A DNA stretch of 64,000 nucleotides, taken from positions 124,001-188,000 of the IMG/VR virus record IMGVR_UViG_3300032236_001850. One strand, given 5' to 3'. The position numbers were made by a program, and so were the translations under genes. Within the stretch, counting starts at the first letter, position 1; every line of letters begins with the position of its first letter. Below the pieces are notes generated by a model. That model had not been told where the DNA came from and did no database searches. It saw nothing but the letters and a program-made list of their open reading frames with translations. Positions 3,966 through 57,523 of the stretch are shown here, one piece after another.

Positions 3966-3983
3966 CCCTTATATATCCCAAAT

Positions 3984-49576: not shown

Positions 49577-50062
49577 ATGAAACACCTAATCGCCTTTGAG
49601 ATTTTTGAAAATGAGAATATGGAATCTCTAATTCCTAAAATTGCTATTTTTAGCGAGGGTGACTACTATAAACTAAAGGAATATATAAAATCCAATAACA
49701 TAAAGACTGATCTCATTCCCCACCATTTCCCATACGAGGAATATTACAGAGATAATATTAAACGTGGTCAGAGGGGCAATAATTTTTTCTATATCATCAA
49801 CGATAAGGTTATGTTGTACCCAAGTCCAGGATACGATAAAAAATTGAAAAAACTAACAGATAGGGATCTAAATTTTCCTAAATCCCACAGAGCTGCATAC
49901 ATTAAAGATTTCAGAAACATCCCACTAGAGGAACTTTACAACAACTCGGAAGAAATACTTGGGTACTCAATATTCCTACTGGACAAACTTATAACAAAGG
50001 CGAAGCAAATGACAAGAAGCAAATTAACACCATTTGAGGTGACTCTATTCGATAGAGATTAG
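49577..50062 (+). CDS. Hypothetical protein with CTS-like leader
   Basis: MKHLIAFEIFEN; GATATATA at 49550. Confidence 0.82.
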   Translation: MKHLIAFEIFENENMESLIPKIAIFSEGDYYKLKEYIKSNNIKTDLIPHHFPYEEYYRDNIKRGQRGNNFFYIINDKVMLYPSPGYDKKLKKLTDRDLNFPKSHRAAYIKDFRNIPLEELYNNSEEILGYSIFLLDKLITKAKQMTRSKLTPFEVTLFDRD

Positions 50063-50065
50063 CAC

Positions 50066-50521
50066 ATGAAACACATACACACATTTCACCAACACGTCAA
50101 CGAATCCCAATCTCTACCTTCAGGGGTAAGCAAGGTGACAGCCGATGAGTATACAAAACAAAAATGTGTTCCTCTATCCCAGGAGGAAACTGAAAACATC
50201 TTATTCTTAACTAATATAGTGGAACTTGCTTCTTCGACAGATCCACAGAGGAAAAACGCGGATAGCGAGGACAATCAGATCTATCTTTGCGCTGGTTTTT
50301 ATCCTTATGGAGCTATTCCGCCATGGGCATTCTTCGGAAAGTCAAAGTCAGGAATTTACTATCTATCAGCTAATCCCACACGATTAACGGACACAGAAGG
50401 CCAGGAAAGCAACTATTACGCTGCAAACTCATTGCAACCTCTAATTTCAATTGCTCTTGATATGTTCATTAAACTTGGAATGGTTGATACCTCCGGAATC
50501 AGCTGGATCGAAATCAAGTAA
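50066..50521 (+). CDS. CTS-leader protein ending WIEIK
   Basis: MKHIHTFHQHVNES...ISWIEIK. Confidence 0.85.
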   Translation: MKHIHTFHQHVNESQSLPSGVSKVTADEYTKQKCVPLSQEETENILFLTNIVELASSTDPQRKNADSEDNQIYLCAGFYPYGAIPPWAFFGKSKSGIYYLSANPTRLTDTEGQESNYYAANSLQPLISIALDMFIKLGMVDTSGISWIEIK

Positions 50522-50665
50522 ACCTCTAAGGGGCCGGCCACCGGAGATCTAACATCCAACATCATTATAGCACGTTTAAGGGACAATAATCTACAAACCC
50601 ATATCTACATCTTATTAGAGAGATATAAACAAGCTACACTCAAATAAACAACCGCATATAAGCAT

Positions 50666-51028
50666 ATGAAACACATCCTACATATAGACACGTATCAACA
50701 CATGAACGAGTCAATAACAAACCCATCATGGGAGAGAGAAGGCACAAGAGTCACACTGGCAGATATAGAGCCACACCTAGAAGAGGAGTTGCTAATCCAA
50801 CCGGACTCCATAGCACATCTACTCATACCCACAGAGAGGGATCCTAGAAGAGTGGCACAAGCCAATCTGGATCACCCAATCATACTCACAAGAGACAAGG
50901 GCCAGCTCACAAGCATACTAGATGGACAACACAGAGTCACAAAAGCCATAGAGCAAGGCAAGTGGGTAAAGGCAAGACAACTCGATCTAGACACAGTCCC
51001 AGAACACATAGCCAAGGTGCTCAGATAA
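50666..51028 (+). CDS. ParB/Srx N-terminal-like protein with CTS-like leader
   Basis: RVAQANLDHPIIL...ILDGQHRVTKA. Confidence 0.75.
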   Translation: MKHILHIDTYQHMNESITNPSWEREGTRVTLADIEPHLEEELLIQPDSIAHLLIPTERDPRRVAQANLDHPIILTRDKGQLTSILDGQHRVTKAIEQGKWVKARQLDLDTVPEHIAKVLR

Positions 51029-51543
51029 CCCAACTCTCATAGAGGCATTCTAAAGGGACTTAGGAAGCAAACCATATAGAGAGATAGTCAGAATAATATA
51101 ACACAGACACGGCCAGGTAATCGCGTTTAACGACCCCCTTCGGAAGCCCCTCTGCATGTGTGAGTTACCACCCAGGGCTGTCCCAACAAGATTTCCTCGT
51201 CGCCCCGATTTCCCATTTCATTCCACTTCTCTCCACTTTGTTCCACTGGGCAAGAGTTTCCACACAGAAACCCACGTTTTCTTTAGGAAAAACCAAATCT
51301 TTTATATATCCGTGATTTTGGGACGAGGTTCCCTGAACACCCATCACTATCTCGCCCCGAACCATGCCTCTTCCCTACATCTCTCTATGTGGAATGGATC
51401 TCCTGCCTCTCTATTAGAGACGGAACATTCTATGTGGCATTATCTCTCTATGCTCTCTCTATAGGAATGACTACCGGGTTGGCCGGCCCTCACCCCTATC
51501 TTGGCCCCAAATTCCCCCATTGCCGGCAGAGGATATATAGTGT
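51029..51543. other. GC-richer non-coding locus with skew flip and CTCTCTAT repeats (candidate origin/terminus)
   Basis: CTCTCTAT at 51381, 51407, 51444, 51455, inverted copy at 51076; TGGCCGGCCC at 51480 inverted to 50530. Confidence 0.45.
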
Positions 51544-52185
51544 ATGAGACACCTTAAGATTTTTGAAATGAACCCAGCCTTCTACGAGGATCCACCGGAA
51601 CCAAAACGTGAGGGAGCGGATGTGGAGTACCCAGAGCATGAGCAGCTCTTCTCCCCTGTGTTCTGCCATGAGGGGTATCCAGAAGAAGATAAAGTCAGAG
51701 GAGAGAAAGGTTACCCTGACTTTGCCATAGTGATGGACAAGACACCTCAGAAAGCCATATGGGTTGTGAGAGATATTGACGATGTCATTCCCGAGAGCTA
51801 CCTGACCTATTGGGAAACGTCCGAAGGAGGCGAGCATGTCCAAGACACCAACTCCATCCTGAACTTTGCCACTGACGAATTCAAAGCCGGTAGATGGGTG
51901 GATGGCTTTGATGCTTGGGACGAGGATGAATGGGCAGTGGATCTTGTGAAGATCACCACTGTGGAAGATGTGGATTCCCTTATCCAAGATCTCTCCAACT
52001 TCATTAACCCGAGCCACGCCTCCTACTATGGCAAGGTGAGAAATCCCAAGATCAAAGATCACTACAGAATTAGTCACGTTCCAGGTGAGGGCGAGATCTC
52101 TTTGGCGAAGAGAGCAATCAGAGCGCTAGAGATATACAAGAGAAGGATTGAATCAAACACCGTCGGCGGGTCCACACCGGCTTAA
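51544..52185 (+). CDS. Acidic hypothetical protein with CTS-like leader
   Basis: MRHLKIFEM; GATATATA 4 nt upstream. Confidence 0.82.
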   Translation: MRHLKIFEMNPAFYEDPPEPKREGADVEYPEHEQLFSPVFCHEGYPEEDKVRGEKGYPDFAIVMDKTPQKAIWVVRDIDDVIPESYLTYWETSEGGEHVQDTNSILNFATDEFKAGRWVDGFDAWDEDEWAVDLVKITTVEDVDSLIQDLSNFINPSHASYYGKVRNPKIKDHYRISHVPGEGEISLAKRAIRALEIYKRRIESNTVGGSTPA

Positions 52186-52274
52186 TCCCAGCCCACTATG
52201 GAGTCCACTCTCCCAAGTCCAGTCCGGAACCCGGCCTCATGAATGGCCTTTCATTTTTCAAAAACAAAAGTAAT

Positions 52275-52315
52275 AAAAATCCTCGAGATAAAAAAATATT
52301 TCGAGGATTTTTTTT
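52275..52315 (+). terminator. Terminator overlapping next promoter
   Basis: AAAAATCCTCGA...TCGAGGATTTTT-T run. Confidence 0.8.
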
Positions 52316-52365
52316 ATTCGAAAGGATTTTGTATATTTGCAATGTAAACAATAAGGCCCCAGGTA

Positions 52366-52390
52366 CATACTATGTTACTAACATACTATG
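52366..52390. repeat. Nested palindrome element, copy 2
   Basis: catactatgttactaacatactatg. Confidence 0.9.
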
Positions 52391-52415
52391 TCTGAGACCA
52401 CGGCAAACACGAACT

Positions 52416-52619
52416 ATGCGCAGACTTAAGAACGGATGGGAGATCGCGGGAGCGACATCAATATGTATTGCTCTCGCGAGCATCTTTATATACATCATGT
52501 GGGAACTCGGCTTATATGGGATGCCTAGTACTACCGATGTGGTTGTCTCAGTAGTACTCACAGCTGTCACACTCTTTCTCTTTATCTGGAGCCCACCCGA
52601 CGAGAACTCTAATACATAG
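52416..52619 (+). CDS. 67-aa two-TM protein flanked by palindrome repeats
   Basis: MRRLKNGWEIAG...; stop codon lies inside repeat copy 3. Confidence 0.7.
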   Translation: MRRLKNGWEIAGATSICIALASIFIYIMWELGLYGMPSTTDVVVSVVLTAVTLFLFIWSPPDENSNT

Positions 52620-56428: not shown

Positions 56429-56923
56429 ATGAAAACAGAAACACACAGAATCGGAGACAAGGACAAGGTATACAAAGTATCCGAGTCGGGTACCTATTAT
56501 TCTAATGAAACACCAGATGAGGTGATAAGAGTATTAGAATCGCTAAGAGGTACACACCAAAGAGTTAAAATCTATCTTGGAGATAGAGAGACAGGCAGAG
56601 ATTGGATGGAGGAAGATGGCAAGGTTGGTAAGATAGGCAGAAGCACTGGTCCAATTAAAATTCCAATACTTCTTAGAACTATGAACAGCCACGGTGGCGG
56701 AGCACTGCTAGATGATTGCATCGTTAAGATAGTAACCTCGCCAACATCATCGACAAGAACACTATACCAGCACCCGAGGTATTACCAACCTGCCATGGAA
56801 ATCACAAATGAAGGTCTGGAAGGTAAGCCAGAGTACACTCACACATTAAGAATCGGCGGTGAGGTCTATAGCAGACACACTTCAATGAGATCAGCCCAAA
56901 GATTGGTCGCATTATTAAAATAA
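56429..56923 (+). CDS. Phage hypothetical protein
   Basis: ATG 56429; GRDWMEE...IGRSTGPIKIP...GGALLDDCIVKI. Confidence 0.85.
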   Translation: MKTETHRIGDKDKVYKVSESGTYYSNETPDEVIRVLESLRGTHQRVKIYLGDRETGRDWMEEDGKVGKIGRSTGPIKIPILLRTMNSHGGGALLDDCIVKIVTSPTSSTRTLYQHPRYYQPAMEITNEGLEGKPEYTHTLRIGGEVYSRHTSMRSAQRLVALLK

Positions 56924-57019
56924 AAACTTTAACGAAAAAAACCTTAAAATAATTTTTTTATCTAAATAGAATTTTTTACATTTACGGAGTAATTAATTAA
57001 ACACTTAAATACATTCACC

Positions 57020-57523
57020 ATGAACAAAAATGAAAAAAAAGCTGGAAACAGCGCAGTAGCAGCTTCGGCTGGGAAAGTTGAAAAAATGGCAAAAGCAGTT
57101 GTCAAAAAAGAAACTGCTAAAGTAGATGCTCCTGAGGCAGCAGTGGCTGAGGTGCCTGCACCGCTAGTACCGCACATCAACGGTGCCTTCGAAGTGGGGT
57201 CAAGAATCGAAACTTCATTGGTTTCTCCATTGAAAGTTTTCGGTAAAAAAGAAGCAACTGGTACTCCGGCTCAAATGAAGCCATGTGCTGCAATCATCTT
57301 AGAAAAGTTGGCCATCGCTGGTCCTACTGGAACTAACTTGATTAGAGTTAAAAAACCAGGTTCAACACGTATTTTCTACACAACTGAGGAAAACCTAATC
57401 GTAGGAGAGGGTGCACCAGCAGCGGTGGTAACGGCTCCAGTCGTTAAGGAGGAAAAACCTGCACCTGCACCAAAGGCTGCAAAAGCTCCAAAAGCTGAAA
57501 CAGTTGCAGAGACTGCTGAGTAA
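57020..57523 (+). CDS. Ala/Lys/Pro-rich protein with central small domain
   Basis: KPAPAPKAAKAPKAE tail. Confidence 0.8.
   Translation: MNKNEKKAGNSAVAASAGKVEKMAKAVVKKETAKVDAPEAAVAEVPAPLVPHINGAFEVGSRIETSLVSPLKVFGKKEATGTPAQMKPCAAIILEKLAIAGPTGTNLIRVKKPGSTRIFYTTEENLIVGEGAPAAVVTAPVVKEEKPAPAPKAAKAPKAETVAETAE

What the first reader, a model, noticed from the sequence alone, without database searches (positions are those of the whole stretch)
50530..51489. Skew-flipping, GC-richer locus bounded by inverted GGCCGGCC sites with iteron-like CTCTCTAT repeats: candidate origin, terminus or pac site
Seen: GGGCCGGCCA (50530) inverted to TGGCCGGCCC (51480). The + strand is T-poor on the left (7 T in 50941-51000) and pyrimidine-rich on the right (45 of 60 in 51181-51240). 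CTCTCTAT occurs x4 (51381-51462) with an inverted copy at 51076. A leftward GATATATA at 51303 has no credible ORF, and about 500 bp is non-coding. Late cargo genes lie mostly left and early cassettes right. Inference: physical genome end or replication origin.
Basis: partly seen in the sequence, partly recalled or inferred. Interest (0 to 1): 0.7.

Follow-up and report, generated by a model that had tools for sequence, protein, structure and literature searches.

The report
Conserved megaphage non-coding control region
The stretch between two rare GGCCGGCC sites in this 434-kb freshwater phage genome is a conserved, roughly 1-kb non-coding control region with a leftward promoter and ordered short repeats; it is a plausible replication origin or RNA locus, but not a genome end or a skew turning point.

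Summary
The two GGCCGGCC sites are the only ones in the 434,509-bp genome. The 500 bases from 50617 are the most T-poor of the whole genome.

Seventeen related loci from freshwater metagenomes carry the same element directly upstream of homologues of the 213-aa gene (51544-52185). Seven of them are full-length, and one lies in a complete 430-kb relative. The shared layout is:
- a GGCC(N)GGCC site;
- an A-rich, T-poor arm of about 450 nt;
- a core of about 400 nt with TCCAC repeats in 10-nt phase, an invariant AT-rich block holding a leftward GATATATA promoter, and TCTCTCTAT motifs in mirror-image arrays;
- a second GGCCGG(G)CC site.

The core is non-coding, shows no conserved RNA fold, and is better conserved than the neighbouring gene. 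Its right half has no indels at all.

Only the window's lineage carries a real 120-aa gene inside the T-poor arm, and that gene has been recoded to 8% T at third codon positions.

Whole-genome skew is monotonic, with no extremum here. Two complete assemblies run through the locus, and the terminase gene lies 89 kb away. Genome end, pac site, inversion and transposon are therefore not supported.

Best guess (0.35): a promoter-primed replication origin. The rivals are a leftward non-coding RNA and a regulatory region.

The parts
50518..50549 (.). Left boundary: the end of the upstream gene (stop codon at 50519-50521) followed by the GGCCGGCC palindrome (50532-50539). It is a recurrent recombination and assembly breakpoint among strains.
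   Evidence: Searches give the site and its rarity. A GGCC(N)GGCC site sits at the same place in 7 full-length copies. Contigs of six other runs stop or change flank at 50530-50535.
50540..51130 (.). A-rich, T-poor arm. In the window: A 0.40, T 0.17. AT skew runs from +0.3 to +0.54. In relatives this arm is about 450 nt of non-coding DNA holding 1-3 reverse copies of the TCTCTCTAT motif, about 93 nt apart.
   Evidence: A 93-nt tandem repeat is found in L022.
50666..51028 (+). 120-aa gene of unknown function (phrog_17560), inserted in the T-poor arm in this lineage only and polymorphic in the population. T at third codon positions is 0.08.
   Evidence: PHROG match at E 2.9e-8. Homologues at 43-49% identity sit in unrelated phage contigs. 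Near strains show 15 substitutions, 9 of them at codon position 3, and no indel inside the ORF. T3 is 0.08 against 0.37-0.43 in homologues. Relatives have no + strand ORF of 60 aa or more in this arm.
51072..51085 (-). Reverse copy of the TCTCTCTAT motif (CCATATAGAGAGAT), conserved in all but one relative that reach this point. It is the mirror partner of 51379-51392.
   Evidence: (I1).
51111..51207 (.). Conserved blocks of the left core: GGCCA..AATCGCGT, CCCCTCT, CCACCCAGGG and GTCGCCCCG. The flank that varies between strains ends at about 51120.
   Evidence: Alignments. The alternative left flank and a twofold depth step at 51120 are seen in runs X2, X3 and X5.
51212..51246 (.). Four (T/C)CCA(C/T) repeats in 10-nt phase, at 51212, 51222, 51232 and 51242. 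The pentamer is conserved and the spacers vary. L009 has one extra repeat.
   Evidence: (D1).
51247..51258 (+). TGGGCAAGAGTT. The TGGGCAAGAG part is invariant in almost all relatives (two have TAGGGCAAGAG). The 12-mer recurs four times in a second repeat array 18.7 kb to the right.
51265..51311 (-). Nearly invariant AT-rich block. Its right end is the leftward promoter motif GGATATATA (51303-51311 on the - strand).
   Evidence: The promoter motif is intact in 16 of 17 aligned copies.
51351..51359 (+). CTCGCCCCG, a direct repeat of GTCGCCCCG at 51199. These are the only two TCGCC(C/T)CG in the genome.
51379..51465 (+). Forward array of TCTCTCTAT-type motifs at 51379, 51406, 51442 and 51454. It contains the palindrome TCTCTATTAGAGA (51408-51420) and the invariant AGAGACGGAACAT.
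   Evidence: The motifs sit at the same offsets (+80, +106, +143) from the leftward promoter in most relatives (each missing in a few), always forward on this side.
51474..51489 (.). Right boundary: CCGGGTTGGCCGGCCC, holding the second GGCCGGCC (51481-51488).
   Evidence: It is conserved as GGGTTGGCCGG(G)CC in most relatives and is degenerate in L019, L020 and L023.
51531..52185 (+). Rightward GGATATATA motif, 4 nt, then the ATG of the 213-aa gene. This gene follows the element wherever the sequence beyond it is held.
   Evidence: The predicted structure (pLDDT 78) has no fold match.

Best explanation
The locus is a conserved, single-copy, non-coding control region of about 0.95 kb. It belongs to a clade of roughly 430-kb freshwater myovirus-like phages and always sits directly upstream of one conserved 213-aa gene.

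Shown:
- It is a spacing-constrained array of short DNA motifs around an invariant AT-rich block that carries a leftward copy of the phage's own gene-start promoter motif.
- TCCAC repeats in 10-nt phase lie just downstream of that promoter.
- TCTCTCTAT motifs point in opposite directions on the two sides.
- GGCC(N)GGCC sites mark both edges.
- The arm that the leftward promoter reads into is the most strand-asymmetric DNA of the genome.

Inferred, and my most likely mechanism: a replication origin of the promoter-activated or promoter-primed kind.
1. Phage or host proteins assemble on the phased repeats and mirror-image motifs.
2. The AT-rich block melts.
3. The leftward transcript, which is G-rich over its first 150 nt or so, stays hybridised to the C-rich template as an R-loop or primer.
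4. The minus strand of the left arm is repeatedly left single-stranded. Deamination there would make the + strand A+C-rich and G+T-poor. This would also explain why the 120-aa gene that landed there has almost no T at silent positions.

The GGCCGGCC sites delimit the element. The left one is also where strains recombine.
For: Conservation.
- 17 related loci carry the core.
- The left core is 72-84% identical where the adjacent gene is only 57-62% identical at the nucleotide level (47-50% at the protein level).
- The 180-nt right core has no indel in any of 9 comparisons.

Non-coding. No frame stays open, and variable columns split 40/45/42 and 37/36/38 over the three codon positions.

No conserved RNA fold. 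The structure conservation index is 0.04-0.55 across the core on both strands, and there is no Rfam match even at E 10.

Repeat architecture.
- The TCCAC repeats keep their 10-nt phase while their spacers vary.
- TCTCTCTAT motifs are forward only at +80, +106 and +143 and reverse only at -226, -320 and -411.

Promoter. 73 of 92 GATATATA copies precede gene starts, and the leftward copy is intact in 16 of 17 sequences inside a nearly invariant AT-rich block.

Strand asymmetry.
- Over 51140-51379 the GC skew read in the sense of the leftward transcript is +0.30 to +0.43.
- The T-poor domain starts exactly at the left GGCCGGCC site and is conserved in 7 of 7 full copies.
- It is the T minimum of the whole genome.
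- The embedded gene has T3 of 0.08 against 0.37-0.43 in its homologues.

The element is single-copy.
Against: - No replication data exist for this phage.
- Whole-genome GC and AT skew show no step or extremum at the locus. This is weak evidence, because about 85% of ORFs of 150 aa or more lie on one strand and that dominates the skew.
- No recognisable initiator, helicase or primase gene is adjacent. DnaB is at 254 kb and PolB at 380-395 kb. The neighbouring 213-aa protein has no known fold.
- The pyrimidine-rich right half lies upstream of the leftward start site, so an R-loop from that promoter does not explain it.
- In one relative (L020) the leftward promoter motif is broken.
- The same anatomy fits a regulatory nucleoprotein site or an RNA gene.
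- No RNA run was listed, so transcription from the leftward promoter is unproven.
Confidence: 0.35

Rival explanations
1. A leftward non-coding RNA gene. The conserved promoter at 51303-51311 would drive an RNA of about 0.75 kb (about 0.65 kb in relatives) that ends at the GC-rich dyad and U-rich tract of the left GGCCGGCC site. Its 5' third carries four to five GUGGA motifs at 10-nt spacing, inside a loop closed by CUCUUGCCC/GGGGCGACGAG, plus further GGA motifs. That would suit titration of an RNA-binding protein. The A-poor 3' part would be shaped by selection on the RNA.
For: - The promoter is conserved and followed by a highly conserved first 35 nt.
- The closing stem is invariant, and L009's 11-nt insertion adds one more repeat inside the loop.
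- The 5' hairpin keeps pairing through G-U/A-U and G-C/G-U changes that work only on the minus strand.
- The asymmetric domain runs from the core exactly to the left site.
- A conserved U-rich tract follows the left-site dyad on the minus strand.
- A-avoidance explains the recoded antisense gene.
Against: - The structure conservation index is low (0.11-0.55), and only 1 of 34 predicted pairs has a double compensatory change.
- The left-site hairpins fold no better than shuffles, with z from -0.7 to +1.4.
- About 200 nt of conserved, indel-free sequence lie upstream of the start site, outside such an RNA.
- The mirror-image motif arrays straddle the promoter.
- No RNA data are available.
Confidence: 0.25
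2. A transcriptional control region. Operator or enhancer-like arrays for a phage regulator would sit between divergent promoters, setting expression of the 213-aa gene block and insulating it from read-through out of the variable cassettes on the left.
For: - Two inverted copies of the promoter motif lie 230-320 bp apart with the motif arrays between and around them.
- The element is always linked to the 213-aa gene.
- The 12-mer TGGRCAAGAGTT occurs only here and four times upstream of another GATATATA-driven gene 18.7 kb away.
- Relatives carry a terminator-like long helix with compensatory changes just before the rightward promoter.
- The C>G, poorly pairing left arm would suit Rho-type termination of read-through. 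This last point rests on general knowledge, not on a test here.
Against: - About 950 bp is very long for an operator region.
- The leftward promoter leads into no conserved gene.
- The extreme T depletion, which even recodes an embedded gene, is not explained.
- The shared 12-mer is not conserved in the complete relative G001.
Confidence: 0.2
3. A physical genome end, or a pac/cos packaging site.
For: - Many metagenome contigs end inside the element: L006, L007, L008, L010, L011, L013, L014, L016 and L020.
- Depth doubles to the right of 51120 in three runs.
- Repeated motifs flanking a central region recall P1 pac and lambda cosB. This comparison is from general knowledge.
Against: - Contig ends scatter over more than 150 nt, and the contigs continue into alternative sequence. 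That is strain branching at a variable/conserved border, not a terminus.
- Two complete genomes and a 37-kb contig of the source run span the locus.
- The large terminase gene is 89 kb away.
- There is no skew extremum.
Confidence: 0.04
4. A mobile or invertible DNA segment bounded by the inverted GGCCGGCC repeats: a transposon or MITE, or a promoter-flipping switch.
For: - A 10-bp perfect inverted repeat sits at the two ends.
- In L009 the two sites are exact reverse complements, GGCCCGGCC and GGCCGGGCC.
- A promoter lies inside the segment.
Against: - The element is single-copy in the genome.
- It has the same place and orientation in all 18 copies.
- No strand-changing joints appear in 8 runs.
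- No recombinase or transposase is recognisable nearby.
- The right site has decayed in L019, L020 and L023 without loss of the element.
Confidence: 0.03

Closest known systems
Promoter-primed (R-loop) origins: phage T4 oriF(uvsY) and oriG(34), ColE1 RNA II, and the vertebrate mitochondrial control region
   Same: - A phage promoter is followed by an easily melted or asymmetric stretch.
- The transcript would be G-rich over a C-rich template.
- It is a non-coding region of about 1 kb with conserved sequence blocks.
- The strand bias is G+T against A+C, as on a strand that is often single-stranded.
   Different: - There is no sequence similarity to any of these.
- The promoter is the phage's GATATATA type, not a MotA-type middle promoter.
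- Phased repeats and mirror-image motif arrays are not part of the T4 or ColE1 origins.
- Origin activity is untested.
- The comparison rests on general knowledge of these systems.
Iteron origins of phages and plasmids: lambda ori, P1 oriR, and P4 ori with its crr
   Same: - Short direct repeats in helical phase lie next to an AT-rich block.
- There are further repeated sites in both orientations.
- A second repeat-bearing locus lies about 19 kb away, recalling P4 ori and crr.
   Different: - The repeats are only 5 conserved bases in a 10-nt unit.
- No initiator gene is recognisable next to them.
- The second locus does not share its repeats in the complete relative.
PeSL modules (promoter-early stem-loop) of the hyperplastic regions of T4-type phages (PMC2839356, PMC4122927)
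   Same: - Conserved short non-coding sequences at gene borders act as recombination joints that shuffle small ORFan cassettes.
- Here the left GGCCGGCC border is such a joint, and the neighbouring cassettes (49577-50062 and the 120-aa gene) come and go between strains.
   Different: - PeSLs are short promoter-terminator motifs repeated many times per genome.
- This element is about 950 bp, single-copy and internally complex.
Protein-sponge RNAs with repeated GGA motifs (CsrB, RsmY, RsmZ)
   Same: The putative leftward RNA has about 7 GGA in its first 120 nt or so, four of them as GUGGA at regular spacing.
   Different: - The motifs would lie in one large loop, not in many small hairpin loops.
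- There is no Rfam match.
- No RNA has been shown to exist.
- The host and its regulators are unknown.

Membership tests
Iteron-type replication origin | Three or more direct repeats in helical phase | tested here: met
   Four (T/C)CCA(C/T) repeats lie at 51212, 51222, 51232 and 51242. Relatives have 3-5 copies in the same 10-nt phase with variable spacers.
Iteron-type replication origin | AT-rich unwinding block next to the repeats | tested here: met
   51277-51311 is 77% A+T in a region that is about 52% A+T, and it is nearly invariant.
Iteron-type replication origin | Cognate initiator gene at or next to the origin | tested here: inconclusive
   The always-linked 213-aa protein has no Pfam, PHROG or fold match. 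DnaB and PolB are 79-220 kb away.
Iteron-type replication origin | Replication starts here (marker frequency, skew switch) | tested here: not met
   There is no extremum or step of cumulative GC or AT skew. Skew is a weak test in a genome with nearly all genes on one strand. Direct mapping was not possible.
R-loop (promoter-primed) origin | Promoter reading into the origin | tested here: inconclusive
   The motif is conserved, and genome-wide it is tied to gene starts. No RNA data are available.
R-loop (promoter-primed) origin | G-rich transcript over a C-rich template downstream of the start | tested here: met
   + strand GC skew is -0.30 to -0.43 over 51140-51379 and is conserved in relatives.
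R-loop (promoter-primed) origin | Persistent RNA-DNA hybrid used as a primer | not testable with these tools
   This needs hybrid mapping in infected cells.
Structured non-coding RNA (Rfam family or new ornate RNA) | Match to a described family | tested here: not met
   No match at gathering score in the window, and none relevant at E up to 10 in 50300-51700.
Structured non-coding RNA (Rfam family or new ornate RNA) | Conserved fold with compensatory changes | tested here: not met
   The structure conservation index is 0.04-0.55 in the core, with 1-2 double changes per strand. Only an extra domain of relatives, absent from the window, has a supported helix.
pac/cos packaging site or physical end | Next to the terminase genes | tested here: not met
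   Terminase_6N matches at 264.3 kb, 89 kb from the locus.
pac/cos packaging site or physical end | Molecule ends at a fixed place | not testable with these tools
   All runs are held as contigs only. Complete assemblies span the locus.
Invertible segment | Both orientations present, and a recombinase nearby | tested here: not met
   All 18 copies have one orientation and no strand-changing joints are seen. No recombinase domain is found in the neighbours.
Transposon or MITE | Several copies, terminal inverted repeats beyond a palindrome, and a transposase | tested here: not met
   It is single-copy. The inverted repeat is 8 palindromic bases plus 1 on each side.
PeSL-type shuffling module | Short promoter-terminator motif repeated at many cassette borders | tested here: not met
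   The element itself is unique. A separate terminator-plus-promoter-like repeat of that kind exists at 52275-52350 and at four other places in the genome.

The most novel reading that the evidence does not exclude
A clade of megaphages carries a dedicated region, similar to the mitochondrial control region, in which a leftward transcript of about 0.7 kb is made at such a rate, or held as an R-loop for so long, that it imprints the strongest strand bias of the genome and recodes any gene that lands in it. That transcript would be either the primer of the phage's main origin or a GUGGA-repeat decoy RNA that titrates a host RNA-binding regulator.
Probability: 0.2. Interest if true: 0.75.

Novelty: new variant of a known kind. 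Interest (0 to 1): 0.5.

Why it matters
To my knowledge, replication origins and other cis-acting control sites of huge phages are largely unmapped. This rests on general knowledge; one literature search found nothing relevant.

This element gives a defined, conserved and testable candidate in an uncultured clade of about 430-kb freshwater phages, with clear motifs for binding assays. It also shows that a local process can override codon choice: an inserted gene has only 8% T at silent positions. That is a caution for composition-based inference of gene transfer. Finally, it shows that the hyperplastic cassettes of these phages recombine at a GC-rich border site.

Tried and rejected
- Phage GenBank search (blastn) with 50000-52600: no match.
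- Rfam at gathering score and at E up to 10: nothing. No tRNA in the window.
- Pfam and PHROGs on ten neighbouring ORFs: nothing beyond phrog_17560 for the 120-aa ORF and a SEC-C motif further right.
- Close relatives of the 120-aa protein in viral contigs: none.
- Structure of the 213-aa protein: a fair model (pLDDT 78) with no fold match in the PDB or BFVD.
- Long-range pairing of the two GGCCGGCC sites: compensated in L009 but broken in L015 and L019, so rejected as an RNA helix.
- Pairing of CCATATAGAGAGA with TCTCTCTATGYGG: changes on the right are mostly not compensated on the left, so these are read as copies of one motif rather than a helix.
- A small protein behind the leftward promoter: the ATG is missing in five lineages and the frame is broken by L009's 11-nt insertion.
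- The 102-aa + strand ORF at 51156-51464: not open in distant relatives.
- Coverage gradient: the other contigs of the source run that touched the stretch belong to other genomes sharing a promoter-like repeat.
- RNA runs: none was listed (a first try failed).
- A wider DNA pattern (AGAGACGGAACAT....TGTG): it gave only chance matches in other viral and bacterial contigs.
- Literature search for jumbo-phage origins: nothing relevant.
Full report
WHAT THE GENOME IS. The window is bases 124,001-188,000 of a single 434,509-bp virus record with 35.2% G+C. IMG/VR classes it as complete with end repeats. It encodes a T4-type neck protein, a tail sheath, a Terminase_6N large terminase, DnaB and PolB, and 31 tRNAs in a cluster at 210-229 kb. 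Among ORFs of 150 aa or more, 265 of 313 lie on the + strand. The runs that hold the stretch are pond and freshwater metagenomes.

THE OBSERVATION.
- GGGCCGGCCA lies at 50531-50540 and TGGCCGGCCC at 51480-51489.
- GGCCGGCC occurs twice in the window against 0.07 expected, and nowhere else in the genome.
- There are 7 T in 50941-51000 and 45 of 60 pyrimidines in 51181-51240.
- The 500 nt from 50617 are the most T-poor of the whole genome, 0.15 against 0.294 with sd 0.041.
- CTCTCTAT occurs four times in 51381-51462, with an inverted copy at 51076. The window holds 11 copies against 2.6 expected.
- GATATATA is a real gene-start signal. Of its 92 genomic copies, 73 lie within about 30 nt upstream of an ATG that opens an ORF of 40 aa or more, spaced either 4 nt or mostly 13-29 nt. 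The minus-strand copy at 51303-51310 has no such ORF.

WHAT THE SKEW SAYS. Cumulative GC and AT skew of the whole genome rise monotonically, and their turning point is at the contig ends. The flip at the locus is purely local. It is nevertheless a conserved property of the element. In all seven full-length copies the + strand AT skew is +0.2 to +0.54 from the left site to about 200 nt left of the leftward promoter. It is then about -0.2 to -0.4 for about 300-400 nt, and returns to the genomic +0.2 in the next gene.

RELATIVES. The 213-aa gene at 51544-52185 has homologues at 45-93% identity in many metagenome contigs. Contigs fetched through them, together with DNA pattern scans, gave 17 loci that carry the same upstream sequence. 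Seven sequences, counting the window, are complete from the stop codon of the upstream gene to the ATG of the 213-aa gene. They measure 910-1012 nt. One of them lies at 152.7 kb of a complete 430,120-bp relative.

The shared plan is:
- the upstream gene's last codons and stop, then GGCC(N)GGCC;
- an arm of about 450 nt with A 0.39-0.40 and T 0.17-0.20, holding 1-3 reverse copies of the motif CCATATAGAGAGA about 93 nt apart (a 93-nt tandem repeat in L022);
- the conserved blocks GGCCA..AATCGCGT, CCCCTCT, CCACCCAGGG and GTCGCCCCG;
- three to five TCCAC repeats in 10-nt phase;
- TGGGCAAGAG;
- a nearly invariant AT-rich block ending in the leftward promoter motif, intact in 16 of 17 sequences;
- CTCGCCCCG;
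- forward TCTCTCTAT-type motifs at fixed offsets of +80, +106 and +143, the middle one inside TGCCTCTCTATTAGAGACGGAACAT;
- GGGTTGGCCGG(G)CC;
- 40-150 variable nt, then GATATATA, 4 nt and ATG.

No forward copy of the motif lies on the left and no reverse copy on the right.

CODING OR NOT. In the core, no frame on either strand stays open across relatives. Variable columns fall 40/45/42 and 37/36/38 on the three phases. The left core is 72-84% identical between the window and distant relatives, whose 213-aa gene is only 57-62% identical at the nucleotide level. The 180-nt right core has no indel in nine comparisons. The element is therefore non-coding, under purifying selection, and constrained in spacing.

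RNA FOLD OR NOT. RNAalifold finds few double compensatory changes on either strand. Sliding windows give a structure conservation index of 0.04-0.55 in the core. On the minus strand, two features are at least compatible with a leftward RNA. One is a 5' hairpin kept by G-U/A-U and G-C/G-U exchanges. The other is an invariant stem, CUCUUGCCC/GGGGCGACGAG, that closes the GUGGA repeats. Only an extra domain found in some relatives, between the right site and the rightward promoter, has a well supported long helix with GC-to-CG exchanges. The window lacks that domain.

THE 120-AA GENE. The ORF at 50666-51028 exists only in the window's lineage. It is real:
- it matches phrog_17560;
- it has homologues at 43-49% identity in unrelated phage contigs, where they are ordinary operon genes;
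- in near strains it shows 15 substitutions, 9 of them at third positions, and no indel, while seven indels fall in its flanks.

Its T content at third positions is 0.08, against 0.37-0.43 in the homologues and 0.22-0.35 in neighbouring genes. Whatever depletes T on the + strand of this arm therefore also acts on coding sequence. The cassette is polymorphic. In three pond runs the depth to the right of about 51120 is twice that of 50534-51136, and an alternative left flank joins there.

BORDERS AND STRAINS. Contigs of six other runs stop or change partner at 50530-50535. Different upstream genes are joined to the same site. The cassette at 49577-50062 is missing in one strain. This is the modular shuffling described for the hyperplastic regions of T4-type phages (PMC2839356, PMC4122927), here at a GC-rich border. 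It also explains why many metagenome contigs end inside the element. Assembly graphs branch where a variable arm meets a core shared by co-occurring strains.

REJECTED READINGS.
- Genome end or pac site: complete assemblies and a 37-kb contig of the source run span the locus, the terminase is 89 kb away, and there is no skew extremum.
- Inversion: all 18 copies have one orientation, no strand-changing joint is seen, and no recombinase is recognisable nearby.
- Transposon: the element is single-copy, and its inverted repeat is only a palindrome plus one base on each side.

MECHANISM. What is shown is a nucleoprotein-type layout. It has phased repeats, mirror-image motif arrays at fixed distances, an invariant AT-rich block with a promoter, and a strand-asymmetric arm that begins exactly at the left border.

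What I infer, with confidence about 0.35, is a promoter-activated or promoter-primed replication origin. The transcript read leftward from about 51298 would be G-rich over a C-rich template; the + strand GC skew is -0.30 to -0.43 over 51140-51379. That composition favours RNA-DNA hybrids, which is established knowledge from ColE1, T4 oriF/oriG and mitochondrial origins. The displaced minus strand of the left arm would accumulate C-to-T and A-to-G changes. This is the observed pattern, with the + strand rich in A and C and poor in G and T.

The main rivals are a leftward non-coding RNA, about 0.75 kb in the window with GUGGA/GGA repeats at its 5' end (0.25), and a transcriptional control or insulator region for the 213-aa gene block (0.2). 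They are not mutually exclusive with each other or with the origin model. None can be settled without RNA, hybrid or replication data, and none of these was available: no RNA run was listed, and all runs are held as contigs only.

CONTEXT WORTH KNOWING. GGCC(N)GGCC occurs only three times in this genome and three times in the complete relative. In both genomes one copy lies about 19 kb to the right of the element. In this genome that site follows a small gene preceded by another non-coding region. That region holds four 32-nt tandem repeats containing TGGRCAAGAGTT, the same 12-mer as 51247-51258. The genome has five copies of it, all on the + strand. The relative has different repeats at that place, so the link between the two loci is uncertain.

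Noticed in passing
whole genome; in the window e.g. 3970-3978(-), 7910(+), 39015(+), 46614(-), 46733(+), 51532(+): GATATATA precedes gene starts in two spacing classes. In one the ATG follows after exactly 4 nt, which would give leaderless messages. In the other the spacing is mostly 13-29 nt. Genes behind it often begin with near-identical codons (MKH(L/I).., MR(I/R)IKTF..).
   Followed up: partly
window 52275-52350: A strong terminator hairpin is followed by a promoter-like repeat (TTATTCGAAAGGATTT..TATATTTGCA). The repeat recurs at genome positions 34.9, 81.4, 137.4 and 142.2 kb, and in other phage contigs of the source sample. It is a PeSL-like terminator-promoter module. It lies inside the predicted ORF 52239-52619, whose 5' part is therefore doubtful.
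   Followed up: partly
window 52360-52390 and genome positions 131.3, 176.6, 178.9, 184.8, 191.9 and 192.9 kb: A short palindromic repeat, CATA(G/C)TATGTTACTAA(G/C)ATACTATG, is scattered through the GC-richer region. Its function is unknown.
   Followed up: no
G000 193,540-194,660 (L028:5540-6660), outside the window: A second non-coding region has GC-rich palindromes and four 32-nt tandem repeats carrying TGGRCAAGAGTT. It is followed by a GATATATA-driven 106-aa gene and the genome's third GGCC(N)GGCC site. The complete relative has a different repeat (27 nt, 3 copies) at the same place.
   Followed up: partly
window 49577-50062: This 161-aa cassette is absent from a near strain: the contig joins 49518 to 50090 in run X3.
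   Followed up: no
relatives L009, L010, L011, L013, L015, L016, L019, L020 and L023, between the right GGCC site and the 213-aa gene promoter: An extra domain of about 120 nt, absent from the window, has a long helix of about 22 bp (CUUCUGGGUUAGUCCCCCAAAAUGG with CCAUUUUAGGGGGACUAACCCGC) and an inner hairpin. Both show compensatory changes. It is either a structured RNA or a two-way terminator.
   Followed up: partly
G000 100,047-101,038 and 56,655-57,489: Two further ORF-free stretches of 0.8-1.0 kb have raised G+C (0.41-0.43). Neither has an ARAGORN tRNA. The only Rfam match is one weak tRNA hit (34 bits) at L027:663-719, inside the second stretch.
   Followed up: no
G000 1-200 and 434,300-434,509: The record's ends lie inside a gene made of tandem GAACCATTAGAACCTGAG-type repeats (EPLEPE.. 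peptide repeats). The end repeat that classes the record as complete may therefore be a repeat overlap.
   Followed up: no
G000 380,134-380,484 and 394,916-395,605: The DNA_pol_B domain is split between two open frames 14 kb apart.
   Followed up: no
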